From the IMG/VR virus record IMGVR_UViG_3300032214_000715, positions 175,164 through 239,163 of that record: a stretch of 64,000 nucleotides of DNA. The stretch is one strand, 5' to 3'. The first letter of the stretch is position 1, and each line of letters opens with the position of its first letter. The notes beneath the pieces were generated by a model. The model was not told the DNA's origin, did not search any database, and worked only from the letters and a program-made list of their open reading frames with translations. Positions 25,327 to 40,471 of this stretch are shown here, piece after piece. The position numbers and the translations under genes are program-made.

Positions 25327-25842
25327 TCATTCTCCTTTTAAGAATTCGTTGATGTCTAGTGAATAATAAATTGAATTTATTTTGTGTACTCCAATCAAAT
25401 ACAATACATAACTTGCTACACTGCTACCGCGGCCCACTCCCCAGACGATATTATTTGTTCTCATAGTATCTACTAAGTATTTTAGATACTGTAGTAGTGA
25501 GAAAGCATTGCGATCCAAATACATTAGTAGTTCTTCGCCAACTCGCTGACGCTCAGCATCAGTTTCACACTGTAGTAACACCCATTCGGCTATATCTAAA
25601 TTTTTATATTCGTCTGGCATTTTCCAGTTAGACTGACATTGTTGATCATAATGATCTGTACTTAGTGAATTAGATTCCCACTGAGTTAGTGATATCATAT
25701 CAGTTAAGTCCAACTCGTTGTAGAGTTGGACCACGTTGAAATCAACCACACACTGTTTTGGACGCCATTCAGGGTCAATCATTAACTGATTTACCACATC
25801 ATCTTCGCTTAGTATTACTTGACCGTGAACATCTACTCTCAT
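25327..25842 (-). CDS. dnaE: Split DNA polymerase III alpha-like, N-fragment (GRGS palm segment)
   Basis: RVGEEL...YLVDTMR.NNIVWGVGRGSSVASYVLYLIGVHKINSIYYSLDINEFLK matches DnaE RL..EL...GPGRGS.AGSLVAY.LGIT..DPL.Y.LLFERFL. Confidence 0.85.
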   Translation of the reverse strand: MRVDVHGQVILSEDDVVNQLMIDPEWRPKQCVVDFNVVQLYNELDLTDMISLTQWESNSLSTDHYDQQCQSNWKMPDEYKNLDIAEWVLLQCETDAERQRVGEELLMYLDRNAFSLLQYLKYLVDTMRTNNIVWGVGRGSSVASYVLYLIGVHKINSIYYSLDINEFLKGE

Positions 25843-25849
25843 AGAGAGT

Positions 25850-25878
25850 ATGATACTAGTATCTACAGAACATATCAA
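25850..25878 (-). promoter_or_regulatory. Sigma70-like promoter for the dnaE N-fragment
   Basis: TTGATA-17 nt-TATCAT, 7 nt before the ATG at 25842. Confidence 0.6.
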
Positions 25879-25887
25879 GATATTTGG

Positions 25888-26121
25888 TTATTTTATGTCT
25901 ATTTTTTCGCCCAGTTGTTTAGATTTTTTATCTAGCATTTCCACTTGTCTTCTTCCATATTCTGCTTTGTAACTATTGAGTACCATAATCAACTGATTCA
26001 TCATCGGCTGATTATGCGTTCTACTAGCAAATAAAATTTTGCTTGATAAATTGCTAATAGTCTCTTGTAGCTCTTCAAGTGATTTTTCAGATAAATCACC
26101 TACTAATGGATGTGTAATCAT
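25888..26121 (-). CDS. Small helical hypothetical protein
   Basis: 77 aa; HPLVGDLSEKSLEEL. Confidence 0.6.
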   Translation of the reverse strand: MITHPLVGDLSEKSLEELQETISNLSSKILFASRTHNQPMMNQLIMVLNSYKAEYGRRQVEMLDKKSKQLGEKIDIK

Positions 26122-26124
26122 AAT

Positions 26125-27297
26125 TTAAGAAGTGGGTGGGACATTGCCTATAATAATGTCGTTTGATCTTGCCACGCCAGTTCCAAACATATTCATTGAC
26201 GCTTCCGATGTGTACAATCTTGTATAGAATCTTTCTCCTGTTTCTGGAGTCAAGCTGTCGGTGGCCAAAGTAATACTAAACGAAGCAGTATTATTATTGA
26301 CTATAACACTTCCCCATGGAGGACTTGGAGACTGAGCATCTTGAGGGGATGCGCCATTTACGCCGAATGTAGTCCACCATAGTACAGTTCCATTACTAAC
26401 ATTAGTGGTAGTAATACTAAATGTAATGGTTTGTCCTTCATCTACTTGAGTCCCGTCAGCAGGAGCAGTAAATTGATATGTCGGATTTAATGGAACTGGC
26501 GGAGGAGTAGGAGCTGGAGGTGCTGGAGTTGTAGTGAACGATGCCAACTGTACTTTTTTCCAGATCGCTGTAGTCCCATCATAGTTACCCACGCACATAT
26601 AAAGATAGTTTCCGTCAATTGCCATAGTTCCTATCTTATCTCCAAATCTACCCACACTTGATGTTGGAGCTAAAGCAGACACTTGAAATGTTTTGCGTGG
26701 GCGATTTACTGGAACTATGGTTAGCGTTTCACCGCAATTTTTAGTGTAGATTATATAGTGTAGTTCAGTAACAGTATCGGGAACAGTGACGCTAAAACCA
26801 CCAGCAGTCTCGGTGTAATTTTCAATACTTAGTTTACTATCATCAAACTGAGCCGGAAAATTAATGACGCTTGAATTATTGGCAATCGGAACAGTTAATA
26901 TCAAATGAGTGCTACATAATGGATATTCACCCGATATTGAACTCCACTTCATAAAGTTCAACGTTACATTTCCAGTAACAGTTCCGTAATGTACGTCTGC
27001 CTTTGATACGTCTACAGTTACTGTGCCACTCAGATTTGAACCTAAATTTTTTGCGGTTCTACTAAATCCTTGTGTTTGAGCATTACTTATCAATCCGTGA
27101 TTCATATCATTATCAAGCACAGTGCCGGACAATGAACTCTTTAGTATTGCCTTTGATTGTAGATCGCTCAATTCACTTGCGGTGATATCCAAATTGGTTT
27201 TTATTCCACTGAAATTATCTCTAAATCCCTGAGTGTTATTGTTAACACCGGGGACAGGATAATTTATATCAATAGACCCTGTATTTATTGTACTCAT
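26125..27297 (-). CDS. Virion structural protein with Pro-rich linker and C-terminal Ig/Calx-beta-like domain
   Basis: YPVPGVNNNTQGFRDNF..IK; PAPPAPTPPP linker; VDEGQTITFSITTTNV...TASFSITLATD..T..GE. Confidence 0.65.
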   Translation of the reverse strand: MSTINTGSIDINYPVPGVNNNTQGFRDNFSGIKTNLDITASELSDLQSKAILKSSLSGTVLDNDMNHGLISNAQTQGFSRTAKNLGSNLSGTVTVDVSKADVHYGTVTGNVTLNFMKWSSISGEYPLCSTHLILTVPIANNSSVINFPAQFDDSKLSIENYTETAGGFSVTVPDTVTELHYIIYTKNCGETLTIVPVNRPRKTFQVSALAPTSSVGRFGDKIGTMAIDGNYLYMCVGNYDGTTAIWKKVQLASFTTTPAPPAPTPPPVPLNPTYQFTAPADGTQVDEGQTITFSITTTNVSNGTVLWWTTFGVNGASPQDAQSPSPPWGSVIVNNNTASFSITLATDSLTPETGERFYTRLYTSEASMNMFGTGVARSNDIIIGNVPPTS

Positions 27298-27321
27298 AAT
27301 TATTTCCCGTAACTATTTACT

Positions 27322-30300
27322 TCACAGTATTACTGCTTCTATTTTTTTAACTTCATCCAACTCGCTTGACTCAATGGCTATAGCAAAAACATTACTGTAA
27401 TCAATTACGTCAATGATTTCATTTACAGCATTAATTGAGATAGCGTAGCCATTATTGTGTGCTATCAATCTATCTCCTTTATTGACTTTGCCAATTACCT
27501 TTACTGGGACTCTACCCTTTAGTGCTACGTATATTCCATTTATTAAAGCAGAATTCATCATATAAGCTGGATTTTTACTTATTACTCCAATAGCTTTATC
27601 TCTAAATGATGAAGCTGTTATTTCTGCTGCTCCGCCAATAGACACTACCGTTCCGTAATCATAGTTTTCATCGGACAAGTATTTCTCAGCTAAGTCGGCA
27701 TACTGAGCGCTAGTAGCAACCCCGTTAAATTTTACAGCATTAAGCTCGCCGTTTGAATTTCTACAAGCAATACTATTTGCTGTTCCCACGCCGGCCGTAT
27801 CTACTCTAGCTTCTCTCCAAGAATCAGTTGATATATCAACTACTTTAAGTTTTGTGACCGTGACGATTTGATTTGAATCTATCGTTAATCCATTTCCGAT
27901 CTTGATTCCACCTAGAACACTATCCGTGGCAACTGGTAATTCATAAACAGATGAAGCAGCAACTGATATAACTCCGTTGGCATCTATAGTTACATTGCTT
28001 CCCTGCTTGACACCACCAAGTGTAGATGAAGTAGCTATCGGTAATTCATAAACAGATGAAGCAGCAACTGATATGACTCCATTGGCATCTATGGTCACAT
28101 TACTTCCCTGCTTGACACCGCCCAGCACTGAGCTAGTAGCTATCGGTAATGAATAAGGAGCAGCAACTGATATAACTCCGTTGGCATCTATAGTTACATT
28201 GCTTCCTTGCTTGACTCCACCTAATATGGATGAAGTAGCTATCGGTAATTCGTAAACAGATGGAGCAGCAACTGATATAACTCCGTTGGCATCTATAGTT
28301 ACATTACTTCCCTGTTTTACACCACCCAGTACTGAGCTAGTAGCTATCGGTAATTCGTAAACAGATGGAGCAGCAACTGATATAACTCCGTTGGCATCTA
28401 TAGTTACATTACTTCCCTGAATAACTCCACCCAGTGTAGATGAAGTAGCTATCGGTAATGGGGGTGCTGACACCGCAGCAGAAACCCATTCTGTTCCATT
28501 CCATTTTAAATAATCATTAGTTTGTTTATTTCCGGTAGATACATTTAACAACTCATCTAGTGAATCGCGTTGACGTATTAAATAATTTGTCTGACTAATT
28601 ATTGATCTAGCGTCAGTTTCCATCTTTGCTATTAATACTCTAGTAAAAGAACTAGGCAATTCTATATCGGACTTAAAAACGGTTACAGATGTTGTATCGT
28701 CATCATTTTTTAATACATAGATATAATTAATTGAATTAGCAGAAAGACTAATGCTCTGTGTTGGAATAGTAGTGTAGTACCCACCTATAAATAGTGGGCA
28801 CGTTGTAACATACGCAATTAATCCAGTAGCACTTTCAGTAGACACATAAATCTGGTTTCTAGGTTTACTACCTGTTAGCCACTCTAGTTCTGTTAGTTCT
28901 GTTTTAACCCCAGTTACATCTTTGGACGACAGAAATACCATAGAGTCATAATTACCGCTTGAAGCGGCTCTATAGTATCCTAGAGCAGTACTATATCCAA
29001 AGGATCCGCCAGGATAACCATTGGTTGATGTGTATCCTCCTGAGCCAGTAGATGTTTCAGCAAAGCTAGACACGTGAGAAGTACTAACGATGTCCGAGCT
29101 AATTTCTATAGATGCCCAATAAAATGCTCTTCCGCCAACTACATTTATACCAAAATTTACTAATAACTTCCCGCTATTAGTTAATAACGTCGGGCCACTA
29201 AATTCAATTTGATTGATATTGTCACCGCGATTTGTTTTACCGTAATCAATTTCTGTTTGAAAGACGGAATTTGTGTTTAGCGTCCAAGTACCATTGGTAC
29301 ACTTGGCCAAATAGCACATGCCGACTGAATCTTTAACTATGGCATAGTATTTGGGAGTGATAGTATTTGCGTCCCAGCAAATATGAATCACAGTTATTCC
29401 AGATTTTCCATTAAGTGTGGTTGGTATTGATGGTACGATAATGTTTGTGTTTGTATAAGTTCTAGTGGCGCCCGTGCTGTTAATAGTGTAAATTGGTTCA
29501 TTTCCTACTATCCAACAGTAGCTTGGTGTAGTTCCAACCACCGTAGTTGAGAAATTGGTAATAGACCCATTATTTTTTATTACAGCAGGAGCATTAGCTA
29601 AAGGATCTAAATTTATATCAGAATTACTTAATATCAACGTATCATTAGTTTGTCCCTGAGCCTTTGAGGCAAACTCAGTCTTGCTGAATGTAGTTTGTAT
29701 AATTTTTGTTCCGTAAGTTACTGATCCTGCTGAAAAATACATATTATTGTCTATTACATAGACCGAATCGCTGTAAACATACTTGGACCAGGGAGACGCA
29801 TCAATTATTCTTTCGGTAAAACTGGTATATCTAGCGGAATTGTTTATGCTTAATGTTTTGTAAGTGAACCCACTAGTGTGTGGCAAAACATATACATCTC
29901 CTATATCAGTTGAAGTCCACGTACTTCTAAATAATTGAAATATTGTTCCGCTATACTCATCTGTTACAAGAGAAGTGGAGTAGCCGGCGCCACCCAATCC
30001 CTGACTCATACCTCCGTTATCCGTATCCCACGTGGAGTCGCTTAACTGATTATATCTAAAAGTTCCAGATTTAATTGGAATTAAATTAACAGTAGTTCCG
30101 CTACCACTTTCTATCCAGGATTTTGGTATAGACCATGATATGTCAAGTGCTACACCCTGACCAACTGATGCTCCTGTGCTAGTGGTATATACATACCAGA
30201 TATGAAATCTTTGATGAAAAGTTTCCGAAAATGAATTCCAGGTAAACCCATAAGAATTATTGGGCGCATATCCTAGTAAAGGCAAAACGTTTGGAGCAAT

Positions 30301-31956
30301 TCTTCCTTGACCAGTGGTGTCGGAAGTGTTAACCATAGTGACTTTATCATACAACAGTTGAGAGCGTAGTAAAGAAAGATTAGCATCATACACTTTTAGA
30401 GTTACTGTATTAGTATCCGAACTTACGTCCGATACTAATATTCTATCGCCACTAGTAGTTGATACTAAAGAGAAATTGGTTCTGCTAGATAATGATGTTA
30501 CGTCATAAGCAAGCGTCCAATCTCTCCACTTAGACGAACCGTATGTCTTTGCTATTACTATTCTAGTAATCGTTTCTGGTTTTTGAATTGTGGTTAGTTT
30601 TAAAACTATAAAATTAGTACCTAGATTTAAAACATCCTGAACCTTCTCATTAACATTTAAAAACGTGGCGCTTATGAGTTCATTATCAAAAATTAAACTA
30701 TCAGTACTTTTTATTCTATAAGCTTTAGCTACATTTCGTGATCCTACTGGAGTTGACGTAGAAAAGTAAAATACTTGATTTCCAGTTTTATCAACAAACA
30801 TAAAATTGGTGGCGTTAAATGAGCCCTGAGAAAAATTAAAACTTCCATATACCGGGATATAATTCTCTTTTAGATACCCAGCAAACGGAGAAAAATTCAA
30901 AAAGTCCTTTATATCAGCGCTAGATACGGAAATGGTTCCGGTCGTTTCGTCAGTTGTAATTCTTTCTCCAATTCTTACTCCGCCCAATGTAGAACTAGTA
31001 GCTTTCGGTAATTCGTAAACTGGCGGAGCAGCAACTGATATAACTCCGTTGGCATCTATAGTTACATTACTGCCCTGTTTTACACCACCCAGTACTGAGC
31101 TAGTAGCTATAGGTAATGAATAAGGAGCAGCAACTGATATAACTCCGTTGGCATCTATAGTTACATTACTGCCCTGTTTTACACCACCCAGTGTAGATGA
31201 AGTAGCTATCGGTAATGAATAAGGAGCAGCAACTGATATAACTCCGTTGGCATCTATAGTTACATTACTGCCCTGTTTTACACCACCCAGTGTAGATGAA
31301 GTAGCTATAGGTAATGAATATGAATAGCTAGGAATGTTTAAAATATTTCCAGTAAGAGTGGATACTCCGCTACTTCCATTTGTAGTTAGAATAATTGGGC
31401 CTTGATAATCAGTACCCTCAACAGCAAAATCTATACTAGTTCCGTTACCTTTTAATAATCCGTTTACAGTGGTTGATATAGTTATTTCAGCAGTAGTTGA
31501 ATTTTTACTCACAGTGCCAAAAAAACCGTTTTCATTTTTTATAGCTACAGTGTTAATATACCCAGCTGGATTAGATACAGAATAGCCGCCCAAGTTTGAT
31601 AGTGCCGTTGATGGCGAAGTTGCTCCGGTGCCGCCGTTTTCTACAGATATAGGATAATCAACTGGTGAGGTGACAGATAATAATCCAAAGTCATCTACCG
31701 TTAATCCTTCACCAACTTTTATTGCCCCTAATGTGGTGGGACTCGCTATGCCAACAACACCGGTAGCACCACTGTGCTCAGTCAAAATTTCAGTAACATT
31801 AGGCCCATCTGAGGTTTCAGAATGAAGCGCGGGGTCATTTCCTATGTACAATCTTCTGGCATCGGTAGCATATCCAATCTCACCAACGTCCAGTTGAGGC
31901 AAATTTTCATTTGCGCCTGTTCTTAATAAAATTTTGCTTATCTGTTTTATAGGCAT
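27322..31956 (-). CDS. Large tail fibre with tandem repeats and C-terminal intramolecular-chaperone-like domain
   Basis: N-terminal ISKILLRTG..LPQLDVGEIGYATDARRLYIGN; 33-35 aa repeats; C-terminal YADLAEKY..GTVV..IGVIS.NPAY.MN..VALKGRVPVKV. Confidence 0.82.
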   Translation of the reverse strand: MPIKQISKILLRTGANENLPQLDVGEIGYATDARRLYIGNDPALHSETSDGPNVTEILTEHSGATGVVGIASPTTLGAIKVGEGLTVDDFGLLSVTSPVDYPISVENGGTGATSPSTALSNLGGYSVSNPAGYINTVAIKNENGFFGTVSKNSTTAEITISTTVNGLLKGNGTSIDFAVEGTDYQGPIILTTNGSSGVSTLTGNILNIPSYSYSLPIATSSTLGGVKQGSNVTIDANGVISVAAPYSLPIATSSTLGGVKQGSNVTIDANGVISVAAPYSLPIATSSVLGGVKQGSNVTIDANGVISVAAPPVYELPKATSSTLGGVRIGERITTDETTGTISVSSADIKDFLNFSPFAGYLKENYIPVYGSFNFSQGSFNATNFMFVDKTGNQVFYFSTSTPVGSRNVAKAYRIKSTDSLIFDNELISATFLNVNEKVQDVLNLGTNFIVLKLTTIQKPETITRIVIAKTYGSSKWRDWTLAYDVTSLSSRTNFSLVSTTSGDRILVSDVSSDTNTVTLKVYDANLSLLRSQLLYDKVTMVNTSDTTGQGRIAPNVLPLLGYAPNNSYGFTWNSFSETFHQRFHIWYVYTTSTGASVGQGVALDISWSIPKSWIESGSGTTVNLIPIKSGTFRYNQLSDSTWDTDNGGMSQGLGGAGYSTSLVTDEYSGTIFQLFRSTWTSTDIGDVYVLPHTSGFTYKTLSINNSARYTSFTERIIDASPWSKYVYSDSVYVIDNNMYFSAGSVTYGTKIIQTTFSKTEFASKAQGQTNDTLILSNSDINLDPLANAPAVIKNNGSITNFSTTVVGTTPSYCWIVGNEPIYTINSTGATRTYTNTNIIVPSIPTTLNGKSGITVIHICWDANTITPKYYAIVKDSVGMCYLAKCTNGTWTLNTNSVFQTEIDYGKTNRGDNINQIEFSGPTLLTNSGKLLVNFGINVVGGRAFYWASIEISSDIVSTSHVSSFAETSTGSGGYTSTNGYPGGSFGYSTALGYYRAASSGNYDSMVFLSSKDVTGVKTELTELEWLTGSKPRNQIYVSTESATGLIAYVTTCPLFIGGYYTTIPTQSISLSANSINYIYVLKNDDDTTSVTVFKSDIELPSSFTRVLIAKMETDARSIISQTNYLIRQRDSLDELLNVSTGNKQTNDYLKWNGTEWVSAAVSAPPLPIATSSTLGGVIQGSNVTIDANGVISVAAPSVYELPIATSSVLGGVKQGSNVTIDANGVISVAAPSVYELPIATSSILGGVKQGSNVTIDANGVISVAAPYSLPIATSSVLGGVKQGSNVTIDANGVISVAASSVYELPIATSSTLGGVKQGSNVTIDANGVISVAASSVYELPVATDSVLGGIKIGNGLTIDSNQIVTVTKLKVVDISTDSWREARVDTAGVGTANSIACRNSNGELNAVKFNGVATSAQYADLAEKYLSDENYDYGTVVSIGGAAEITASSFRDKAIGVISKNPAYMMNSALINGIYVALKGRVPVKVIGKVNKGDRLIAHNNGYAISINAVNEIIDVIDYSNVFAIAIESSELDEVKKIEAVIL
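27900..28460 (-). repeat. Tandem 99/105-bp coding repeats (5 near-identical plus 1 degenerate)
   Basis: gcagcaactgatat recurs at 27956, 28061, 28160, 28265, 28370; encodes LPIATSSxLGGVKQGSNVTIDANGVISVAA. Confidence 0.9.
31021..31320 (-). repeat. Tandem 99-bp coding repeats (3 copies), same unit as 27900-28460
   Basis: ggagcagcaactgatataactccgttggcatc at 31025, 31124, 31223. Confidence 0.9.
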
Positions 31957-31986
31957 AGTATACTCATTGAATATACTTATTTATCA

Positions 31987-32700
31987 CTACGTTAATGTGT
32001 AATACTGCTCTACTCTTTTCCACCATAATGAACGATATTTTTCAAATTCATCGCCCTCAAGTATAAATTCCTGATACACGGGTTCAGTTAATAGCTTTTG
32101 TTGTTGATCAACTTCGGGCTTAACACACATTAAAACAACGCCGCGTTTTATATTTGTTCCGTGTATTTCATTATGAGCCTCGGAATAAGCCGCTAGTTGT
32201 AGAAAGTAATCGTCAATCCACTCACGCTTTTTTGGCTTGTTTGTTTGTTTAAAATCCAATATCGATTCTTTATTTTCGTGTATACCAACACAATCGGTAG
32301 TACCAGCATATACTTCAGGAAAAAATAACGGAACCTCAATACCCCAATATTCAGTTACATTTAAAAGTCCCTGATTTATAACTACATTTGCCATAGCGTG
32401 ACTAGCCCAAGAAAAGGGATTCTGGTCTCGCTCTTTTATTTCTCCAGTTTTAACATAGTGCTCTAGATAGGCATGCATGCGAGTGCCGCGACTAGCAGCC
32501 TCGGTAGTAATTTGCTGAGCACGATCATTACCAACACGATTGCGCCACTGTTGTAGTATTTTCTTTTTTTCCTCTGGCTTAGTTGCTTCTAAAATAGTAG
32601 TAACGCTTGCTAACTTGTTTCCGTCAGGAGTGGAATAACGTCTTTGCCCATTAATGGTCTGACGATCTAATGGTTGATAATTAAATTTTGGATTGTACAT
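31987..32700 (-). CDS. PD-(D/E)XK exonuclease (Cas4/MGME1-like)
   Basis: SVTTIL; RGTRMH..LE; EVPL; YAGTTDCVG; ILDFKQT; DYFLQLAAY. Confidence 0.88.
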   Translation of the reverse strand: MYNPKFNYQPLDRQTINGQRRYSTPDGNKLASVTTILEATKPEEKKKILQQWRNRVGNDRAQQITTEAASRGTRMHAYLEHYVKTGEIKERDQNPFSWASHAMANVVINQGLLNVTEYWGIEVPLFFPEVYAGTTDCVGIHENKESILDFKQTNKPKKREWIDDYFLQLAAYSEAHNEIHGTNIKRGVVLMCVKPEVDQQQKLLTEPVYQEFILEGDEFEKYRSLWWKRVEQYYTLT

Positions 32701-32705
32701 AGTAA

Positions 32706-32738: not shown

Positions 32739-32748
32739 GTAATTAATT

Positions 32749-33105
32749 TTATATTTCTCGCTTTTTGGTAGCCCGTTTGGCCATTTTTTCCAGAGTATCG
32801 GCTTGTTTTTCTTCCTCGTCTTGTTCCGAAGAAATATCGGTTGCTTGTTTTCCGTCCATGCCTTTGAAAACAATATCCCCGTCTTGTACACTATCAATAA
32901 TATTGGACAATGGGGGTTTTTCAATCATCTTGACAAACATTTCTTCGTCAATGTCCAAGCCACGATCCTGTAATTGACCCAATACAGTTTGTAGACTGTA
33001 TGTGTTTTTATACCCGGTATCCTTAATACGATTTAACACCAGTCCGACAACGCCAGACAGTATAGTTTCGTCGCTGGTACCAAAGTCAAACTCATACAGT
33101 TTCAT
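32749..33105 (-). CDS. Hypothetical protein
   Basis: 118 aa; MKLYEF start; C-terminal LEKMAKRA. Confidence 0.6.
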   Translation of the reverse strand: MKLYEFDFGTSDETILSGVVGLVLNRIKDTGYKNTYSLQTVLGQLQDRGLDIDEEMFVKMIEKPPLSNIIDSVQDGDIVFKGMDGKQATDISSEQDEEEKQADTLEKMAKRATKKREI

Positions 33106-33106
33106 A

Positions 33107-33811
33107 TTATCTGCGCTCGCGACCTAAACTAGTTGGTCTTTCTGGCTCTTCTTCTGGTTCTTCGGGCAGTTCAGGTAGTTCAGGTAGTTCTTCACCCATA
33201 TCTGGTTCTTCTCCTGGCATTCCTGGCATTTCGGGAGATTCTTCTCCTGGAGCAGCTGGCATCGCACCACCATCTCCGGTCAGACCGCCTAATGCTCCAC
33301 TTACGGCTTCCTTCGCTGTCTTTACGGCTTCCTGTAAAGTAGTTAGAGCTTGACCAACGGCCGTATTGAACTGATCGGCGTCACTTGATTGAAAGTCTGG
33401 AGAGTTTTTTATGCCCTCTACTACAGCATTCAATTCTTCAACATTCATCTTACTAACTTGTTCCATCATTTTTTGAATGTCGTCAATCATACTTTGAGCC
33501 GCAAGCAATACTTGAGATTTTTGAATCTCTTCATTTTCTATTACTATGCGAGTTTGTGATCTCAAGTCGCGCAAGTGACCACTTAGCGCTTGTTCCATCA
33601 TTAATAGTTTTAAATAAGCAGGATCGCGATGACTAGAATGTATTCTTGAACTTGCTTTAGACTCATTTATAAGAGAACGTACTTTAGTAAGCATTGAATG
33701 AGTTTTTCTAATATCAAGCTGTTCTAAGTTCATATCGTATTTGAAATTTTCACGCAGCACTTTAGTTGCTAATTTGCTCTTTTTGTTTTCGCGCAGGTCG
33801 GTTAAGTTCAT
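33107..33811 (-). CDS. Putative head scaffold/core-like protein
   Basis: 234 aa; helical; Glu/Pro-rich tail ending LGRERR; LxE motifs. Confidence 0.5.
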   Translation of the reverse strand: MNLTDLRENKKSKLATKVLRENFKYDMNLEQLDIRKTHSMLTKVRSLINESKASSRIHSSHRDPAYLKLLMMEQALSGHLRDLRSQTRIVIENEEIQKSQVLLAAQSMIDDIQKMMEQVSKMNVEELNAVVEGIKNSPDFQSSDADQFNTAVGQALTTLQEAVKTAKEAVSGALGGLTGDGGAMPAAPGEESPEMPGMPGEEPDMGEELPELPELPEEPEEEPERPTSLGRERR

Positions 33812-34250
33812 TTTGAAATCCTCGTTCTTGGCACATTTTTGCCATTATTATGTATTTATCTATTTCTCTTTGAAATTTGTTTTGTCTTTCAATGTCCTGT
33901 TCGTACTTTACACTATAAAGTAAAAAGTCAAAATTCTTATTTTTTTTGAGCTTTGAATGTATCAACTTATCTACCGCAACGCTCTCTAGCTTTAGATCCA
34001 GTTCTAATATTCTAGCAGTCTCATAAAACTTATTGCTTCTGTCTAAAATTGTCCAAGCAATCGCGTGCTTCATTTTATGAAACACAAATGTTTTTTCATC
34101 GCGATATCTATAAACAGTAATCTTGTGTTTGTCTTGACGAATTTCATACTGCTCAAAAATTGTATGGGTCCCGTCGTCGTTTTTAAAGAACATACAGTTT
34201 AGTAACGACGGGCTGATTAAATTTTGTATATGATGTAAAGTATTATTCAT
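33762..34250 (-). CDS. Hypothetical protein
   Basis: 162 aa ORF in operon. Confidence 0.55.
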   Translation of the reverse strand: MNNTLHHIQNLISPSLLNCMFFKNDDGTHTIFEQYEIRQDKHKITVYRYRDEKTFVFHKMKHAIAWTILDRSNKFYETARILELDLKLESVAVDKLIHSKLKKNKNFDFLLYSVKYEQDIERQNKFQREIDKYIIMAKMCQERGFQNELNRPARKQKEQISN

Positions 34251-34689
34251 CTTCTACTATCTCAAACTCAACATTTTTTAAATTTGATGAAGTATTTAGC
34301 TGACTTACGTTTGTTACTGACTCGTCCAAATTTAAAAGCATAGGAACTCCATCGCAATCGGTTAGAAGTTTTCCTAAATTAGAGTTTTCATCAGCAAATA
34401 CTCCACTGTGACTAATAGTAAAAGAAAATGACCACATTATTACATCGTCTGTCTTAAACTGTATTTTGTCTCCCCATCGCAAATCTTTCTTAGAAACACT
34501 GAGTTGTTTTGGGGTAGTTATATTTTCTGGTTGACTACGCATACTTATTACTTGTAGCATAGTTTCAAAATTGGCTTGTTGATTTCTTTGCTTTACGTAT
34601 TCAGCTTGATTCGTAACAACAGAATGATTTTGTCGGTGACTGATATTAGTATTGGTAATATCAAATAGAGTGTAGCATCTAATCTTCAT
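34243..34689 (-). CDS. Hypothetical phage protein
   Basis: MKIRCYTLFDITNT...RNQQANFETMLQVISMRSQP. Confidence 0.65.
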   Translation of the reverse strand: MKIRCYTLFDITNTNISHRQNHSVVTNQAEYVKQRNQQANFETMLQVISMRSQPENITTPKQLSVSKKDLRWGDKIQFKTDDVIMWSFSFTISHSGVFADENSNLGKLLTDCDGVPMLLNLDESVTNVSQLNTSSNLKNVEFEIVEDE

Positions 34690-34712
34690 AGTATTAGTAT
34701 TTACCGACCAAT

Positions 34713-34742
34713 AAAAAACCCAGGAATATTCCTGGGTTTTTT
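34713..34742. terminator. Palindromic intrinsic terminator
   Basis: aaaaaacccaggaatattcctgggtttttt. Confidence 0.85.
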
Positions 34743-34759
34743 GAGTGCTTACTGTACTA

Positions 34760-35149
34760 TTAAGCTAGTCCGCCAGCAGTAACTACTGCGCCAGCCAAGT
34801 TATAGCCATTTACTGTTCCTAGTGCTTGTATCGCAGACTGTAGAGAGGCAGCAGCGTCTCCGCCTGTTGGGTACATAGCAACGCGGAATACTCCATTATT
34901 GTTGAATTGATACATGTGAATGGTACTCATTTGAGCCATTACACGTAGAACTGCTTCAACGGCGCCGCCTGTGCCAAACTGTCCGCTAACACCATCAGCG
35001 CCCAAGTCGCCGGTGTAAAAGTCTAGCTTTGGACCCTGAGGTTGAATTGGGATGCCAGCAGAACCACTTGTGGCCCCGTTTACATAAGTACCTACGTCAT
35101 ATACGGCTACGCCACTTGCGTCACCATTTGTTCTTGTAAAACTTGCCAT
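34760..35149 (-). CDS. Small, probably abundant virion protein (possible head decoration)
   Basis: 129 aa Ala/Gly-rich; own late promoter (35193-35200), AAGGAG RBS and terminator. Confidence 0.55.
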   Translation of the reverse strand: MASFTRTNGDASGVAVYDVGTYVNGATSGSAGIPIQPQGPKLDFYTGDLGADGVSGQFGTGGAVEAVLRVMAQMSTIHMYQFNNNGVFRVAMYPTGGDAAASLQSAIQALGTVNGYNLAGAVVTAGGLA

Positions 35150-35219
35150 TTTTAAATCTCCTTGTTGTTATGAGGTTAAAATCCTCTATACTTATTTATC
35201 ATTTTGATAAAAAAAATAG

Positions 35220-36026
35220 TCATAGACGATAATAAGCGTGAAACAGCTTATTTAGCTTGTCTATCGTTGCGGTCGTAGTAACTTTCATATCACCAACAAC
35301 TGGAGTCAGTGAGCGACCGGTGACATCTATCCAAACGCTGTTTACGAAATCGTATCTAAAATCTCTGTTCTCAGTAATAACTCGTGGCTCTGGAGTTATG
35401 TCGCTACCAGGAGGATTAAAAGAGTCAAATTTAGATTTAGACATAGGATTACTAACTGGTAATTTTCCACCCGCTCCTATTCTGTTGTAGAAAATTGTCC
35501 ATACCGTTTTATCAGGAGGTTGATCATTTCCTAGCGGTGTTGCTCCTGCGGGCGCAGATTGTTCCTGTGATGAATATACTATATTCCACACGGCATTAGA
35601 TAAAATCTCTGCTATTTTAGGGTTTAGTCTGCTTCCGGCAGCGGTGTAAGCAGTAACAAATTCATTAATAGCATTATCTATAGACGTCAATTGTTGCTGA
35701 GTTGGACGCAATTTATTATTAACAGTGATCTCGTACATTAAAAACTCTTTAACTACCTGATCAACAGATCCAACGGCTTCATTGGCAATAATAGACTCAA
35801 CCAAATGATTAAAAGACGAGTATGACTGATTCTGTCTAGTTTCGGCCAACCCGTTAGATTTAAATTTCTGTTGAAGTCTACTGTAGAAACCGGTAAACCA
35901 CTTTTTATTGGCAATTTCCATATCTCTTTTATCGTAGGCTACCGCTTGTCTTGTTTGACCTAACCAGCCGCGCCTTGCCGCCCAGTCCGTTACGGCATTC
36001 TCATCAACAAATTCACTACTTTTCAT
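35220..36026 (-). CDS. Hypothetical protein, putative head-internal
   Basis: MKSSEFVDE N-terminus. Confidence 0.55.
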   Translation of the reverse strand: MKSSEFVDENAVTDWAARRGWLGQTRQAVAYDKRDMEIANKKWFTGFYSRLQQKFKSNGLAETRQNQSYSSFNHLVESIIANEAVGSVDQVVKEFLMYEITVNNKLRPTQQQLTSIDNAINEFVTAYTAAGSRLNPKIAEILSNAVWNIVYSSQEQSAPAGATPLGNDQPPDKTVWTIFYNRIGAGGKLPVSNPMSKSKFDSFNPPGSDITPEPRVITENRDFRYDFVNSVWIDVTGRSLTPVVGDMKVTTTATIDKLNKLFHAYYRL

Positions 36027-36270
36027 TTGAATCCTCTGATCGCTTTAAGCTACGAACAAACTTTCCTTGATCGCGATTTTTGATAGCAATCAATAATTTT
36101 TTTTCTAAAACGGCAGCTTGCTCAGCAGTATAGTTACGCTGTATTACTTCAAGTAAATGTATAGCACTGGAAATAACATTCACCGCACGATTTTCAATTA
36201 TGTGCTTAGTGTCATGGCTTCTGCTGATGCTTTCAAGCTCTTCTAACAATGTTTTAGTTTGTCGTTTCAT
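36016..36270 (-). CDS. Hypothetical protein
   Basis: 84 aa; TKTLLEELESI...IIENRA.NVISSAIHL. Confidence 0.6.
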   Translation of the reverse strand: MKRQTKTLLEELESISRSHDTKHIIENRAVNVISSAIHLLEVIQRNYTAEQAAVLEKKLLIAIKNRDQGKFVRSLKRSEDSNEK

Positions 36271-36298
36271 ATTAAATATTTATCTTGTATTACGATAA

Positions 36299-37729
36299 TT
36301 AATTAGTCTTCTTTAAATTACTAAGCATTGATTTAAGCTTGGCACTTTGTACGTCTGCCTGTACTGCTTTCACAGGAGTGGACAATATCTCTCCAGTTTC
36401 AGTATCAATCTTGGGTGCCACTACTGTTCCAACAGTACTACTGGTTTTAATCTTATTCAATAGTGTGCTAGCACTATTACTGCTGGCAACATAACCAGTA
36501 CTATCTCCGTCATCAAAGATTCTTAGCGTATCAACATTGAATGACAGATCAATCTTTTGCCCTACGCCGCTGCTGCTACGAGTTTTCATCAATTGAATTT
36601 GATACTGACCCTTTTCACGCATATGACGACTAGTAAAAATACCAAACACATTATCAGCGGTATTGATTTTAGAAATGCCACCGCTAATATGACTGTGATC
36701 AAATTCAATTTCTTCTACCGCACTACGATTAAGCTGACTGGCAGTTACTAACAACACATTTAATTCTTTGGCAAGATTACGTATCTCTTCACTAACGTAC
36801 TTGTCTTTAATAAACAAATCACTAGGGCTAACTTTAGCACTTACTGGCATCAACAAGTCCAAATAGTCAATACACACAAAATCTATTCTGATTCCGGTTT
36901 CAATACTAAGAGTCTTAATGTAAGCACGTATATCATTAATGTTACTTTGTGCTGGCATATACTTGATGTAAAACTTTCCAGCTTTCTTGGCTGTCATTTT
37001 AACTTTAAGTTCAACATCATCTAGATTCTTAAACACATCCTTTGTTGATGTGTCTGTCATCATACTATCAATACGCCAAGCACACAGTTCTTCGCTAAGT
37101 TCTAGCGTTACATAGACTCCGTTCAATCCAGCTAATGCCCAATTCACACTTAAGTTCTGCATGAACAGTGACTTGCCGCTGCCACTACCCCCAGCAAATA
37201 TCTGTAACTCACCACGATTAAACCCACCGTACAATTTATTATCAAGACAGGGCCAGCCAGTGCTAATTTGCCCGTTGTTGTTTTTAATCTTATTCAATCT
37301 AGCACGTGGATCGGCAAAGTAATCAGTGCCCATATCTTTAGTCAGTGATATTTGTACAGCGTCCTTAATTAGCTTTTCTACTGGATCATAATTGCCTTTT
37401 TCAAGTAAGTCAGCACTCTTTAGAATTGCTCGTTCTAGTTCTTGTCTGCGAGTGAATACTTCAAAAGAATCTAGAAACCAATCTATGTCGCTTTTTCTTA
37501 GGTCGTCAATAACCGTTAAGCTAACTTTAGTAACCGCATGAATTTGATCACTGTCCGGGACACTGGTATATTTCTCAGCAAATTCTTTAATGAATTTGAC
37601 CGCTGGACGCAGCGATTTATCAAAGTTTTCTGTATTCAGAATGTTACTGATTCTAGTGTATAACTGCGGATCACTAATCATCATTCTTAGAAACAGTTCT
37701 TGAATTTCTATTCCGTATTCTGTGCTCAT
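36299..37729 (-). CDS. Replicative DnaB-family helicase (T4 gp41-like)
   Basis: STGW..LD..L.GG..RGEL.IFAGGSGSGKS; TLELSE; IDYLDL; TASQLNR; KTR. Confidence 0.93.
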   Translation of the reverse strand: MSTEYGIEIQELFLRMMISDPQLYTRISNILNTENFDKSLRPAVKFIKEFAEKYTSVPDSDQIHAVTKVSLTVIDDLRKSDIDWFLDSFEVFTRRQELERAILKSADLLEKGNYDPVEKLIKDAVQISLTKDMGTDYFADPRARLNKIKNNNGQISTGWPCLDNKLYGGFNRGELQIFAGGSGSGKSLFMQNLSVNWALAGLNGVYVTLELSEELCAWRIDSMMTDTSTKDVFKNLDDVELKVKMTAKKAGKFYIKYMPAQSNINDIRAYIKTLSIETGIRIDFVCIDYLDLLMPVSAKVSPSDLFIKDKYVSEEIRNLAKELNVLLVTASQLNRSAVEEIEFDHSHISGGISKINTADNVFGIFTSRHMREKGQYQIQLMKTRSSSGVGQKIDLSFNVDTLRIFDDGDSTGYVASSNSASTLLNKIKTSSTVGTVVAPKIDTETGEILSTPVKAVQADVQSAKLKSMLSNLKKTN

Positions 37730-38691
37730 TTAATTCTCTTTTTTGCCATTTCTACTTTAATTTTACTTGTAGTAGCTGATTGAAATATGCTTAATAGTGT
37801 TGGAATTTTTCCATATCTACGAACAGCGTCATTAACATCCTTTACGTCACTGTGCCACTCAGGAATACTTATCTTATATCCTAACTCTAAAGCACGATCA
37901 CAAATTTGTAATCCACTTTTATCCTGATCAGGCACAACTATTATTGTTCTGTTCAATCTGTTGATTAATTGTGCTTGCTCATCACTGATATTGCTACCCA
38001 TATAAGCACATCCACCAATGCTAATAGCATCAAATTGGCCCTCAACCATAATACACGATGACCAATTATCGTTTTTGAACTGAGCATCTATATTGAACAC
38101 GTATCCAGACGGCTGATCAGATAGATACTTAGGTTTTCTGCCATCTAAAAATCTACAGGTATTTCCCACAATGTCGCCATTGTAAAAATATGGGATTATG
38201 ATTCCTGGTCTAGTAGCATCACTATCTACATAATATGAATAGGAATGTTCAGACAGTCCACGACTACGCAGATACTCAATATATAGTTGATGTTCAGAAT
38301 AGCTAGCATTCAATCTAACGCACGTATCACTTAATTGTTTTACTGGAAAGTTTATAACTACTGCTTTTGACTTTTTAGTTCTTAAATCCAATACATCACG
38401 CTGGCTGAAGCTTTCAAAGCTTATCTTATTGATAACGTATTCGTCCAATCCGCACCAACTTAACAACAATCTAGTGTTTTTAGTTAATTGTTTTCCAAGT
38501 CTAAATCCAGCTTTGTAGTGACAATTGAAACAGTGATAGGTCCAATTTTGATTATCATCAAATATTATTCCGCCACGCATTCTGCGATCAGCACTATGAC
38601 CACGATTAACGCAGCAAGGAGCGTTGAAACTGTACCATCCACTTTGAGTACGTTTCTTTTTACCCGGAACAACAGACAATATATCTAACAT
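37726..38691 (-). CDS. DNA primase (T4 gp61-like)
   Basis: N-terminal Zn finger (PCC...HCFNC); TOPRIM VEGQFDA, PDQD..G, KDVND. Confidence 0.88.
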   Translation of the reverse strand: MLDILSVVPGKKKRTQSGWYSFNAPCCVNRGHSADRRMRGGIIFDDNQNWTYHCFNCHYKAGFRLGKQLTKNTRLLLSWCGLDEYVINKISFESFSQRDVLDLRTKKSKAVVINFPVKQLSDTCVRLNASYSEHQLYIEYLRSRGLSEHSYSYYVDSDATRPGIIIPYFYNGDIVGNTCRFLDGRKPKYLSDQPSGYVFNIDAQFKNDNWSSCIMVEGQFDAISIGGCAYMGSNISDEQAQLINRLNRTIIVVPDQDKSGLQICDRALELGYKISIPEWHSDVKDVNDAVRRYGKIPTLLSIFQSATTSKIKVEMAKKRIK

Positions 38692-38699
38692 ATACTACT

Positions 38700-38728
38700 A
38701 GTATACGCTACTGCGGCGAAGTATTCAA
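38700..38728 (-). promoter_or_regulatory. Sigma70-like promoter of the primase-helicase operon
   Basis: TTGAAT-17 nt-TATACT, 8 nt before the ATG. Confidence 0.6.
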
Positions 38729-38738
38729 GTTTATAGAC

Positions 38739-39500
38739 TTATCTGACCAGTATTTTGGTCACACTGCCGATGGCGTCATCAGTCTCAAACTTTACTCGTA
38801 TGAATGGATGAAATCCCTCTATATTATAGAATCTATTTTCCGTTACGTTTGTAAAAGAAATTGAATCAGTAATGTCGTAAGCATGAGCAAAGTTGGACAG
38901 TGTACTTCCTTGAAAAATTATTCTGCCAGTATAGTTTTTAAAATACAACTGAAACGTGTAAAAATTTTGTTGTTTGGTGTAAAAGCTACTACTATAGTGA
39001 ATGGTCGGAGCGGTTAACACTGTGTAGTCGGGTATAGTTAATTCATAAGATGGCACATAAGAACTTAACACGCTATCCATTATTCTTACCACACCACGAG
39101 CCCCGCCTTGAGCGTCTACGAATACTGGATAATCAAATTCATCCACTGGTATTTCAATACTGTAATAGCATAGTTGACGATCTAGTTTATCCAATTCTTC
39201 GGAGCTAACTCTTAGACCAGCTATTCCGGTCACTGGGAAAATATACACTAATGTTTTTTGTAGTAATATTTTTTTGCCGTCTGGATTAATAATTCTAGCT
39301 GTTATTTCTTTATTGGAAATATCAACTGGCTTTTGCTCCTGATTTACAAAAGCAAACTCAATCAAATTGTCCACTCCGCGATGTAGTATTAGTTCTTTTG
39401 CGTACACTTTGTTATACCTTATCTTTCCAGATGAGGCTGCCTCTAATAAAACCACTTGCGTTCTTTGATTGTATAAATAAACTTGAGTCTGGGCTGCCAC
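38739..39500 (-). CDS. Putative virion structural (beta-sandwich) protein
   Basis: LHRGVDNLIEF.F.NQEQKPVD; IIFQGST; FIRVKF. Confidence 0.55.
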   Translation of the reverse strand: MAAQTQVYLYNQRTQVVLLEAASSGKIRYNKVYAKELILHRGVDNLIEFAFVNQEQKPVDISNKEITARIINPDGKKILLQKTLVYIFPVTGIAGLRVSSEELDKLDRQLCYYSIEIPVDEFDYPVFVDAQGGARGVVRIMDSVLSSYVPSYELTIPDYTVLTAPTIHYSSSFYTKQQNFYTFQLYFKNYTGRIIFQGSTLSNFAHAYDITDSISFTNVTENRFYNIEGFHPFIRVKFETDDAIGSVTKILVR

Positions 39501-39522
39501 TTTTCTGTCCTCTTAACTATTT

Positions 39523-39900
39523 ATGACCAATGATTTTTTTCAAAAACTGAGCGATTCTCACCCGTTCATAACCGTTTGTAGCTATGCCGGACAAGAATAC
39601 GTGGGTGTAATTCAAAATCGTGATGATTTTATAACTACATTCTATGATTACGGTTCTATAGTAGATCAGAAATTAAAACAGCTATATTTGTCGTTGGGAG
39701 ATCAATGGTGGTGGGAGAGCAACAGATTAATTCCCATCAACATCTTTCTACGCGATGATTGGGCTATTTTTAAGCCATATCTTAGAACGTTTAACAATAA
39801 AGGTCTGAATATTCTTCACGGGCCTGCCACGTGTATGAGCGATCTTGCTAAAAAACGAGTTAAGCGTCGTAGCATTACTCTTGTGAAGAAAATGCTATAG
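39523..39900 (+). CDS. Hypothetical phage protein
   Basis: PFIT..YAGQEYVGVIQN...WWWESNRLIPINIFL. Confidence 0.65.
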   Translation: MTNDFFQKLSDSHPFITVCSYAGQEYVGVIQNRDDFITTFYDYGSIVDQKLKQLYLSLGDQWWWESNRLIPINIFLRDDWAIFKPYLRTFNNKGLNILHGPATCMSDLAKKRVKRRSITLVKKML

Positions 39901-40471
39901 CATTTTCTGTCAAAAGATTCATATTTACAACTATCAAATTACTGTATGCAACGGCGTGGGCTTTTTTGAACATATAACCGTCATCCTTATTTTTGTCCCA
40001 TACTGTTTTTGCCACCTCCGCCCAAGATTTACCAATTAGATTCCGCTTTCCAGGTCTTATAACAGCCAGAAACATTGCCATTCTAGTAATACTATTGATT
40101 GATTCTGGCATTTTCAGCATACTATCGTAGTGATTTCCAATGTGAATCAATTTACTAAAGTAATCGCGATTCTGTAATAGTGACCAATCTGGTTCTTTCA
40201 TTAACTCAACCAAATGCTGTTCATCTTTTACATATTTGTAAATCCATACGTTCAATAAATCTAATTTAATATACCCACGTTGCTCAGCCATCTCATAATC
40301 TAGGGCGGCCGTTTTATGAATCGGATCATAGGGTATGTCGGTCGGATAAACTCCAGTGTTGTGCTTTTTTACTACATTATCTTTGCGTATAGAAGCCGAA
40401 GTAACATCTACGATTTTTAATATCGCATCCCGATCAGCAAAATCTATATCAATATCACTATTTAATTTCAT
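39875..40471 (-). CDS. dnaE: Split DNA polymerase III alpha-like, catalytic C-fragment
   Basis: SDIDIDF (two catalytic Asp); KHNTGVY; GYIKLDLL (third Asp); LAVIRPG; GYMFKKAHAVAY correspond to DnaE PDIDIDF, HAAGVV, GL.KFDFL, ALYRPG, GYGFNKSH..AY. Confidence 0.88.
   Translation of the reverse strand: MKLNSDIDIDFADRDAILKIVDVTSASIRKDNVVKKHNTGVYPTDIPYDPIHKTAALDYEMAEQRGYIKLDLLNVWIYKYVKDEQHLVELMKEPDWSLLQNRDYFSKLIHIGNHYDSMLKMPESINSITRMAMFLAVIRPGKRNLIGKSWAEVAKTVWDKNKDDGYMFKKAHAVAYSNLIVVNMNLLTENAIAFSSQE

What the first reader, a model, noticed from the sequence alone, without database searches (positions are those of the whole stretch)
25327..40471. Ultra-minimal C-family (DnaE) polymerase split into two intein-free genes 14 kb apart
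Seen: ORF 25327-25842 (171 aa) carries the DnaE GRGS palm segment and ends at INEFLKGE, the equivalent of FERFLNPER. ORF 39875-40471 (198 aa) starts MKLNSDIDIDF, the very next DnaE motif, then carries KHNTGVY, KLDLL, IRPG and FKKAHAVAY. Established: in E. coli Pol III alpha these motifs hold the catalytic triad D401/D403/D555 inside a chain of about 1160 aa that also has PHP, thumb, long fingers, clamp-binding and OB domains. Here about 370 aa keep all three Asp, the two halves abut without overlap, and no intein is attached. The break also differs from the cyanobacterial split-intein site. The accessory proteins (gp41, gp61, gp44/62, gp32) are T4-type and normally serve a B-family enzyme, and none is visible in this window. 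Inference: a heterodimeric or multi-subunit mini Pol III, possibly completed by the co-transcribed 40468-42403 proteins, or a repurposed nucleotidyltransferase.
Basis: partly seen in the sequence, partly recalled or inferred. Interest (0 to 1): 0.88.

Follow-up and report, generated by a model that had tools for sequence, protein, structure and literature searches.

The report
Split mini Pol III of jumbo phages

Summary
ORF 25327-25842 (171 aa) and ORF 39875-40471 (198 aa), both on the minus strand, are the N- and C-halves of a minimal Pol III alpha palm plus short fingers.

- **Break point:** the N half ends at the equivalent of E. coli residue 395 and the C half starts at 396. There is no overlap and no room for an intein.
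- **Catalytic residues:** D6, D8 and D71 of the C half match D401, D403 and D555. They are invariant in 37 homologues.
- **Structure:** AlphaFold models of both halves find only Pol III alpha structures in the PDB.

This is not new. Iyer et al. 2021 (PMC7824862) described it for "group 2.2" jumbo phages (RaK2, 121Q, PA5oct, Atu_ph07), alongside a family B polymerase. The window is a new, distant member from a roughly 341-kb freshwater phage.

What I add:
- The break point and both gene neighbourhoods are constant in 160 metagenomic loci.
- The C gene always lies upstream of the N gene.
- A rare unsplit single-chain form (375-376 aa, three clusters) exists, which argues that the halves work as one enzyme.

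I found no evidence that the co-transcribed neighbours complete the enzyme. I did not find a family B polymerase in the roughly 130 kb of this genome I could read, but relatives have one. I found no published test of activity.

The parts
25327..25842 (-). N half of the minimal Pol III alpha (171 aa). Residues about 60-171 are the palm N-terminal helices plus the invariant GVGRGSS triphosphate-binding loop. The protein ends at EFLKGE, the equivalent of E. coli 395. The first 60 or so residues are a small, variable extra domain.
   Evidence: Pfam PF07733 32.3 bits; phrog_11127 2e-43; hhalign to E. coli alpha 349-395; AF2 pLDDT 81 with the top 5 Foldseek PDB hits all Pol III alpha (7pu7, 5lew prob 0.99); invariant residues
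39875..40471 (-). C half of the minimal Pol III alpha (198 aa). It holds the DxDxD strand (D6, D8, D10), the third catalytic Asp (D71 in KLDLL), a trimmed thumb and fingers with RPG (139-141) and FKKAHAVAY (168-176), and a disordered C-terminal tail.
   Evidence: phrog_11778 3e-58; AF2 pLDDT 89, pTM 0.79; top 10 Foldseek PDB hits all Pol III alpha, prob up to 1.00, TMq 0.54; motif alignment to E. coli; invariant D6, D8, D10, D71, R139, P140, H172, Y176
40468..41178 (-). Context: 236-aa protein with an N-terminal C2H2 zinc finger and a phage-only domain. Its stop overlaps the C-half start (ATGA). It is a conserved upstream neighbour but not always adjacent.
   Evidence: Pfam zf-C2H2 0.0016; phrog_11058; invariant C17, C20, H33, C35; synteny in 70/80 loci with 0-6 kb inserts; ATGA overlap
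41150..41743 (-). Context: 197-aa protein, possibly the gp62-like small clamp-loader subunit. This is a lead only.
   Evidence: Atlas feature score 0.89 and TM 0.89 over 98 aa to clusters carrying PF16790 Phage_clamp_A; hhalign to T4 gp62 E 0.24; no Pfam hit
41903..42403 (-). Context: 166-aa protein of unknown function. It is the most conserved gene of the block.
   Evidence: 79% mean column identity in 27 sequences; no Pfam, PDB or named Atlas relative
39523..39900 (+). Context: 125-aa protein (phrog_11637) on the opposite strand. It overlaps the 3' end of the C-half gene by 26 nt and is kept next to both split and unsplit forms.
   Evidence: phrog_11637 8.6e-32; present in 79/80 loci; present beside the fused genes
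36299..38691 (-). Context: DnaB-type helicase (36299-37729) and primase (37726-38691), 1.2 kb downstream of the C half in the same conserved block.
   Evidence: Pfam DnaB_C and Toprim_2 on the called genes; PA5oct annotation of the syntenic genes; synteny
23327..24920 (-). Context: GroES-like co-chaperonin (24561-24920) and RFC/gp44-type clamp loader (23327-24259), directly downstream of the N half in a second conserved block.
   Evidence: phrog_168 9.6e-72; the same order in PA5oct/MIJ3 and in 70-79 of 80 loci

Best explanation
The two genes encode the two halves of one minimal C-family (Pol III alpha type) nucleotidyltransferase that assembles in trans, without protein splicing.

**How the parts fit.** The 171-aa N protein supplies the helices and the GRGS loop that hold the triphosphate of the incoming dNTP. 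The 198-aa C protein supplies the beta-sheet with the three metal-binding aspartates and a shortened finger module (RPG and K-x-H-x-x-Y motifs) that contacts the nucleotide and template. Neither half can form the active site alone.

**What is missing.** The enzyme lacks the PHP/proofreading domain, most of the thumb, the clamp-binding motif, and the OB and tau-binding domains.

**Likely role.** I take it to be an accessory DNA polymerase of a T4-type replisome rather than the main replicase. It could extend primers, fill gaps or act in repair or recombination synthesis. In sequenced relatives a family B polymerase is also present.

**Shown:** homology, exact abutment, conservation of catalytic residues, constant split, co-occurrence, and existence of a single-chain form.
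**Inferred:** physical assembly, DNA polymerase activity, and the accessory role.
For: - **Homology of both halves to Pol III alpha.** Shown by profile, by motif alignment and by fold.
- **Exact junction.** N ends at E. coli 395 and C starts at 396.
- **Purifying selection.** The GVGRGSS loop and D6, D8, D10, D71, R139, P140, H172 and Y176 are invariant among 37 homologues at 55-82% identity. Each family has at least 8000 clusters at 90% identity, with narrow length ranges of 165-181 and 188-207 aa.
- **Constant boundaries.** All 80 N loci stop within 0-3 residues of EFL(K/R). In all 80 C loci only 5-42 in-frame codons are open upstream of DxDxD, and 62 of them have the Met 5 residues before the motif.
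- **Co-occurrence.** 93 and 96 phage records with matching genus counts. Two IMG/VR contigs, PA5oct and MIJ3 carry both genes on one strand, C upstream, 40-44 kb apart.
- **Rosetta-stone fusion.** Three independent clusters of a 375-376-aa single-chain protein hit both PHROGs. They align colinearly across the junction to full-length DnaE (phrog_405 358-462; E. coli 321-427, E 9e-10).
- **Replication context.** The C half sits in the UvsW ... primase-helicase block and the N half sits next to the clamp loader.
- **PolB in relatives.**; PMC6892783; PMC11895373; PMC7824862.
Against: - No biochemical or genetic test was found in the searchable literature.
- I could not model the complex, because only single chains could be predicted. 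The AF2 model of the N half alone is only moderately confident (pTM 0.60).
- The C half gets no Pfam or PDB sequence hit on its own. Its assignment rests on PHROG, fold and motif evidence.
- No RNA run was listed for this phage, so expression here is unshown.
- A family B polymerase was not found in the roughly 130 kb of this genome that I could read. The accessory role is therefore inferred from relatives.
Confidence: 0.62

Rival explanations
1. The heterodimer is the main replicative polymerase, or an obligatory second one, of this phage. It would work with the T4-type clamp, clamp loader, primase and helicase, for example extending RNA primers before hand-off as DnaE does for PolC in Bacillus.
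For: No PolB was found in the window or in the 66 kb of flanks I read. Each half is embedded in a replisome gene block, primase-helicase or clamp loader. The gene pair is strictly conserved across a very large clade. A recurrent short motif in a disordered C-terminal tail could be a clamp-binding peptide.
Against: Sequenced relatives all carry PolB as well (PMC6892783, PMC11895373, PMC7824862). About 211 kb of this genome is unread. The enzyme has no proofreading domain, almost no thumb and no recognised clamp motif, which is a poor fit for a processive replicase.
Confidence: 0.2
2. It is a repurposed nucleotidyltransferase that does not copy a template, for example tailing, nucleotide-signal synthesis or a counter-defence activity. 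It would use the Pol-beta-like core only.
For: The Pol-beta-like fold is used by many non-polymerase transferases. The thumb is lost and the fingers are strongly trimmed. No activity data exist.
Against: The Pol III-specific finger motifs (RPG, F-K-K-x-H-x-x-Y) are retained and invariant, which a template-independent enzyme would not need. The only fold matches are Pol III alpha. The genes sit in replication blocks.
Confidence: 0.1
3. The two ORFs are decaying remnants of a captured dnaE gene, or they act independently of each other.
For: The C half has no Pfam hit. The genes are far apart and in reversed order.
Against: Catalytic residues are invariant. Lengths and boundaries are constant in 160 loci and thousands of clusters. 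AF2 models are confident. The halves co-occur and a natural fusion exists.
Confidence: 0.03

Closest known systems
Split minimal DNA polymerase III alpha of group 2.2 jumbo phages (Iyer, Anantharaman, Krishnan, Burroughs and Aravind 2021, Viruses 13:63, PMC7824862; PHROG families 11127 and 11778)
   Same: It has the same two standalone proteins: an N-terminal NTP-binding half and a C-terminal Mg2+/template-binding half. They are encoded by distant genes, no other Pol III domains are present, and the host genome is a T4-like jumbo phage. The window's proteins score 2e-43 and 3e-58 against those families.
   Different: This copy comes from an uncultured freshwater phage. Against isolates the local matches run at 35-52% identity, and the best IMG/VR C half is 68% identical. 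The genes are only 14 kb apart, against 40-44 kb in PA5oct/MIJ3 and two IMG/VR contigs and over 100 kb in SCTP-2 and Atu_ph07. PolB has not yet been located in this genome.
Bacterial Pol III alpha (DnaE; E. coli 1160 aa; structures 2hnh, 2hpi, 5fkw)
   Same: It has the Pol-beta-like palm with the GRGS loop and three catalytic Asp, plus the RPG and FNKSHSAAY-type finger motifs.
   Different: The total is 369 aa in two chains. There is no PHP domain, almost no thumb (65 residues between the catalytic Asp positions against 154), shortened fingers, and no clamp-binding, OB or tau-binding regions.
Cyanobacterial split-intein DnaE (Synechocystis/Nostoc dnaE-n and dnaE-c)
   Same: A C-family polymerase encoded by two distant genes.
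   Different: From my own knowledge, the break there lies late in the protein (after about residue 774) and the halves carry split-intein pieces that ligate them. Here the break is at 395|396 and the alignment leaves no room for intein residues.
Unsplit 375-376-aa mini Pol III (P0288, P0391, P0392; metagenomic contigs L234, L235)
   Same: It has the same domain content, the same motifs and the same downstream opposite-strand neighbour, phrog_11637.
   Different: It is a single chain with a 10-residue linker where the split forms break. It sits on AT-rich (25-27% GC) short contigs and is rare: 3 clusters against at least 8000.
Two-polymerase replisomes (PolC plus DnaE in Bacillus; PolB plus PolD in archaea)
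   Same: This is a possible functional analogy: a second, simpler polymerase working beside the main replicase.
   Different: It is an analogy only. No functional data exist for the phage enzyme.

Membership tests
Split minimal Pol III alpha of group 2.2 jumbo phages (Iyer et al. 2021) | Standalone N-terminal NTP-binding half of about 170 aa with the GRGS loop | tested here: met
   phrog_11127 2e-43 over 15-181 of the 183-aa ORF; PF07733 32.3 bits; invariant GVGRGSS
Split minimal Pol III alpha of group 2.2 jumbo phages (Iyer et al. 2021) | Standalone C-terminal half of about 200 aa with the metal-binding Asp residues and the template-binding part | tested here: met
   phrog_11778 3e-58; D6/D8/D71 aligned to D401/D403/D555; Foldseek top 10 all Pol III alpha
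Split minimal Pol III alpha of group 2.2 jumbo phages (Iyer et al. 2021) | Halves encoded by distantly located genes, never adjacent | tested here: met
   14,032 nt apart in the window. Neither half lies within 10 kb of the other in 160 related loci.
Split minimal Pol III alpha of group 2.2 jumbo phages (Iyer et al. 2021) | Host genome is a T4-like jumbo phage (gp23-type capsid, gp32 SSB, UvsW, RFC-type clamp loader) | tested here: met
   The same genome is found on contigs of 239,163 and 341,154 bp.
Split minimal Pol III alpha of group 2.2 jumbo phages (Iyer et al. 2021) | Accompanied by a family B DNA polymerase in the same genome | tested here: inconclusive
   Absent from the window and about 66 kb of flanks. 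About 211 kb is unread. PolB is present in the relative MIJ3.
C-family replicative polymerase alpha subunit (DnaE/PolC) | Pol-beta-like palm with three catalytic carboxylates and the G-S loop | tested here: met
   fold matches
C-family replicative polymerase alpha subunit (DnaE/PolC) | N-terminal PHP domain | tested here: not met
   The N half aligns only from about E. coli 285 onward. There are no PF02811 hits, and E. coli DnaE finds nothing else in the window.
C-family replicative polymerase alpha subunit (DnaE/PolC) | Full thumb and fingers, clamp-binding motif, OB and tau-binding C-terminal domains | tested here: not met
   The C half ends about 20 residues after the FNKSHSAAY-equivalent motif (E. 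coli about 766 of 1160). There are 65 residues between the catalytic Asp positions against 154.
C-family replicative polymerase alpha subunit (DnaE/PolC) | Template-directed DNA synthesis | not testable with these tools
   No activity data were found in the literature searches.
Intein-split DnaE (cyanobacterial type) | Split-intein halves at the break that ligate the exteins | tested here: not met
   N ends 0-3 residues after EFL(K/R) and C starts 5 residues before DxDxD. The two ends map to E. coli 395 and 396.

The most novel reading that the evidence does not exclude
The split pair, and its rare 375-aa single-chain relative, is a catalytically competent C-family DNA polymerase of about 370 residues. 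That would make it by far the smallest of its family. It would act as an obligatory second polymerase, for primer extension or lagging-strand synthesis, inside a PolB-based T4-type replisome. This would be a two-polymerase fork in a phage, and a natural definition of the minimal Pol III catalytic core.
Probability: 0.2. Interest if true: 0.75.

Novelty: new member of a known kind. Interest (0 to 1): 0.42.

Why it matters
If active, these proteins define the minimal catalytic core of the bacterial replicase family: a palm and stub fingers of about 370 residues, against about 1160. They would show that this core can be assembled from two polypeptides broken between the nucleotide-binding loop and the metal-binding strand.

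The family is very large, with at least 8000 clusters at 90% identity per half, in freshwater and other metagenomes and in well-known jumbo phages such as RaK2, 121Q, PA5oct and Atu_ph07. I found no published experimental test. The natural single-chain version found here offers a simple first construct for that test. The concept itself was published in 2021, so the value of this window is confirmation and extension, not discovery.

Tried and rejected
- **Locating PolB in this genome.** I walked the source contig with 8 look-ups from the window edges. To the left there is a tail-fibre cluster of more than 45 kb, then AAA, VWA, DHFR, ThyA, NUDIX, gp15, gp13 and sheath. To the right there is TerL, gp23, protease and portal. 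No PolB turned up.
- **PDB sequence search with the C-half profile.** It found nothing. Only fold search worked.
- **Neighbours as missing polymerase parts.**
  - p197 has only an Atlas lead to gp62. It is not confirmed by hhalign (E 0.24) or Pfam.
  - p236 is a C2H2 zinc-finger protein found only in phages.
  - p166 has no relatives of known function.
- **p166 as a free-standing Hint/intein-like domain that might ligate the halves.** This was my own hunch. Comparison with the MIJ3 PolB intein regions gave no support, so I dropped it.
- **An adjacent N-C arrangement in the lineage nearest the fused form.** The upstream 200-aa gene there is the zinc-finger protein, not the N half.
- **Expression.** No RNA run was listed. 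The PA5oct omics paper does not mention these genes in its main text.
- **Pseudogene reading.** Rejected on conservation and constant boundaries.

Full report
**1. Observation**

The ORF listing shows both ORFs, and both are on the minus strand.
- The N half is 25327-25842: 171 aa from ATG 25842. The mechanical ORF extends to a TTG at 25878, but 36 homologues start at the ATG.
- The C half is 39875-40471, 198 aa.

The quoted motifs are all present: WGVGRGSS and a C-terminal INEFLKGE in the first, and MKLNSDIDIDF, KHNTGVY, KLDLL, IRPG and FKKAHAVAY in the second. In the direction of transcription the C-half gene comes first, and the N-half gene lies 14,032 nt downstream.

**2. Is it a Pol III alpha core?**

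- **Sequence profiles.** The N half hits Pfam PF07733 (DNA_pol3_alpha) above the curated cut-off (32.3 against 23.9 bits). The C half has no Pfam hit. Both halves match dedicated phage families annotated as DNA polymerase: phrog_11127 (171-position profile, 2e-43) and phrog_11778 (197 positions, 3e-58). They also give weak hits to a full-length DnaE family, phrog_405, at positions 364-429 and 773-812.
- **Alignment to E. coli.** hhalign of a 37-sequence alignment of each half against E. coli DnaE places N 125-171 on residues 349-395 and C 152-178 on 739-766. Local alignments place C DIDIDF on DFDVDF 401-406, C ...GYIKLDLL on ...GLVKFDFL (D71 = D555), and C RPG on RPG 639.
- **The junction.** The N protein ends at the equivalent of residue 395 and the C protein begins at 396. 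There is no overlap, no gap and no room for intein residues.
- **Predicted structure.** AlphaFold2 models are confident for C (pLDDT 89, pTM 0.79) and fair for N (pLDDT 81, pTM 0.60). Foldseek against the PDB returns Pol III alpha structures as the top 10 hits for C (2hpi, 4iqj, 3e0d, 5fkw, 2hnh; probability up to 1.00, TM 0.54 on the query). It returns them as the top 5 for N (M. tuberculosis DnaE1 7pu7 and 5lew at probability 0.99 and 0.98). Everything below those hits is noise.
- **What is trimmed.** Compared with E. coli, 65 residues instead of 154 separate the second and third catalytic Asp, so the thumb is almost gone. Thirty residues instead of about 115 separate RPG from the K-x-H motif. 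The chain stops about 20 residues after that motif. The PHP, clamp-binding, OB and tau-binding parts are absent.

**3. Is it functional or decaying?**

Each half belongs to a very large family. At least 8000 clusters at 90% identity passed E 0.001, with lengths of 165-181 aa and 188-207 aa among the 120 best. Among 37 sequences at 55-82% identity to the window, these positions are invariant:
- the GVGRGSS loop of N;
- D6, D8, D10, D71, R139, P140, H172 and Y176 of C.

This rules out decay.

**4. Constancy of the split, and context**

I examined 80 IMG/VR loci for each half.
- Every N ORF stops within 0-3 residues of EFL(K/R).
- In all 80 C loci only 5-42 in-frame codons are open upstream of DxDxD. 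In 62 of them the start Met lies 5 residues before the motif.
- Neither half ever lies within 10 kb of the other.

Two gene blocks are conserved:
- UvsW helicase - p166 - p197 - p236 (C2H2 zinc finger) - [0-6 kb insert] - C half - p125 (opposite strand, overlapping) - p253 - primase - DnaB helicase (the same in PA5oct).
- p77 - N half - p133 - GroES-like - (p100) - clamp loader (the same in PA5oct and MIJ3).

Where both halves are on one contig, they share a strand with C upstream, 40-44 kb apart. This holds for two IMG/VR contigs, PA5oct and MIJ3. In isolates the halves occur in 93 and 96 records, with matching counts per host genus.

**5. A natural single-chain form**

An exhaustive profile search with the C half found 486 representatives at 50% clustering. 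One of them, P0288, has 375 aa with the C half at residues 190-371.
- Its residues 79-182 match the N-half profile (hhalign probability 98.8%).
- Two further clusters, P0391 and P0392 (376 aa, 78-81% identical), come from other data sets.
- The protein hits both PHROG families end to end. It aligns colinearly across the junction with full-length DnaE: phrog_405 358-462 and E. coli 321-427 at E 9e-10.
- The junction reads EFIKDNKEGIYNIADFDID.
- The contigs are short (2.4-5.9 kb) and AT-rich (25-27% GC).
- The gene keeps the opposite-strand phrog_11637 neighbour of the C half, but has two small unrelated ORFs upstream instead of p236.

In a quick maximum-likelihood tree of C halves, the fused form groups with nine ordinary split C halves at 51-59% identity. 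Branch support is 85-91, which is not strong. The group sits inside the diversity of split forms under midpoint rooting. That suggests a secondary fusion, but the root is not known.

In that nearest split lineage the gene upstream of the C half is the zinc-finger protein, not the N half.

The fusion is classical evidence that the two halves act as one unit.

**6. What is already known**

Iyer et al. [quoted passage not shown] They report it alongside a family B polymerase and suggest a role in synthesis of one strand or in repair.

My searches found no later paper that tests it.

Relatives do carry PolB:
- MIJ3 has polB at 123.9-129.1 kb, interrupted by an HNH/intein element (PMC6892783).
- Sharanji lists a DNA polymerase II (PMC11895373).

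**7. This genome**

The window is the last 64 kb of JGI contig Ga0335250_1210714 (239,163 bp). The same genome is on ENA scaffold_5 of 341,154 bp. It recurs in river, lake and lagoon metagenomes. Against isolates the local matches run at 35-52% identity, and the best IMG/VR C half is 68% identical.

PolB is not in the window, nor in about 56 kb to the left or 10 kb to the right. About 211 kb stays unread, so the question is open for this genome.

**8. Neighbours as missing subunits**

I found no evidence that they complete the enzyme.
- p236 is translationally coupled to the C half here (ATGA overlap). Elsewhere it is separated from it by inserts, and it is not found next to the unsplit gene.
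- p197 has a weak structural and feature lead to the gp62 clamp-loader subunit, which sequence comparison does not confirm.
- p166 is the most conserved gene of the block (79% mean column identity) and remains unexplained.

**9. Mechanism and verdict**

The best-supported reading is a heterodimeric minimal C-family polymerase with a composite active site. The triphosphate-binding loop comes from one chain, and the metal ligands and finger motifs come from the other. It assembles without splicing and works beside PolB in a T4-type replisome.
- The homology, the junction, the conservation and the fusion are shown.
- Assembly, activity and role are inferred.

The thing itself is a new member of a kind described computationally in 2021.

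Noticed in passing
window 41903-42403 (-): A 166-aa protein that is the most conserved gene of the replication block (79% mean column identity in 27 homologues). It is more conserved than either polymerase half, and it has no Pfam, PDB or named Atlas relative.
   Followed up: partly
window 39523-39900 (+): A 125-aa gene (phrog_11637) converging on the C-half gene and overlapping its 3' end by 26 nt. It is kept in 79 of 80 related loci and also beside the unsplit polymerase genes.
   Followed up: partly
window 39875-39905 (-), C-terminal tail of the C half: The last 10 or so residues are predicted to be disordered. Many, but not all, homologues carry a recurrent NPxAFSLxE-like motif there. It could be a clamp-binding peptide.
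   Followed up: no
L234 1066-2193 and L235 519-1649: Rare unsplit single-chain mini Pol III (375-376 aa) on AT-rich short contigs. There are three clusters from different data sets, and their closest relatives are ordinary split C halves.
   Followed up: yes
window 27322-31956 (-): A 1544-aa fibre protein with many copies of a roughly 30-aa repeat (LPIATSSxLGGVKQGSNVTIDANGVISVAAP). By my coordinate mapping, the 341-kb ENA contig of the same genome starts inside this gene.
   Followed up: no
left of the window: L012, L014, L015, L097 (JGI record about 140-175 kb): A tail-fibre cluster of more than 45 kb with proteins of 1758, 1975, 826, 2074 and 2239 aa, several of which carry Laminin_G_3 domains.
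   Followed up: no
window 41150-41743 (-): A 197-aa protein with a weak lead to the T4 gp62 clamp-loader subunit. Its most conserved motif, SPGxGKQFHxW, lines up with the T4 gp62 segment VPRGKRYGKW, but the alignment scores only E 0.24.
   Followed up: partly
PHROG hits of window 25327-25878 and of L235 519-1649: Two other phage families, phrog_7513 (461 positions) and phrog_13169 (463 positions), match the N half near their C-terminal ends. Other phage DnaE-like N-terminal pieces may therefore break close to the same point.
   Followed up: no
window 25843-25887 and 40468-40471: There is no obvious Shine-Dalgarno sequence in the 45 nt before the N-half ATG. The C-half ATG overlaps the stop of the upstream zinc-finger gene (ATGA).
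   Followed up: no
window 44252-44902 (+): An HNH_3 endonuclease gene on the opposite strand, between the UvsW helicase and the UvsX/gp32 block. It is probably a mobile homing element.
   Followed up: no
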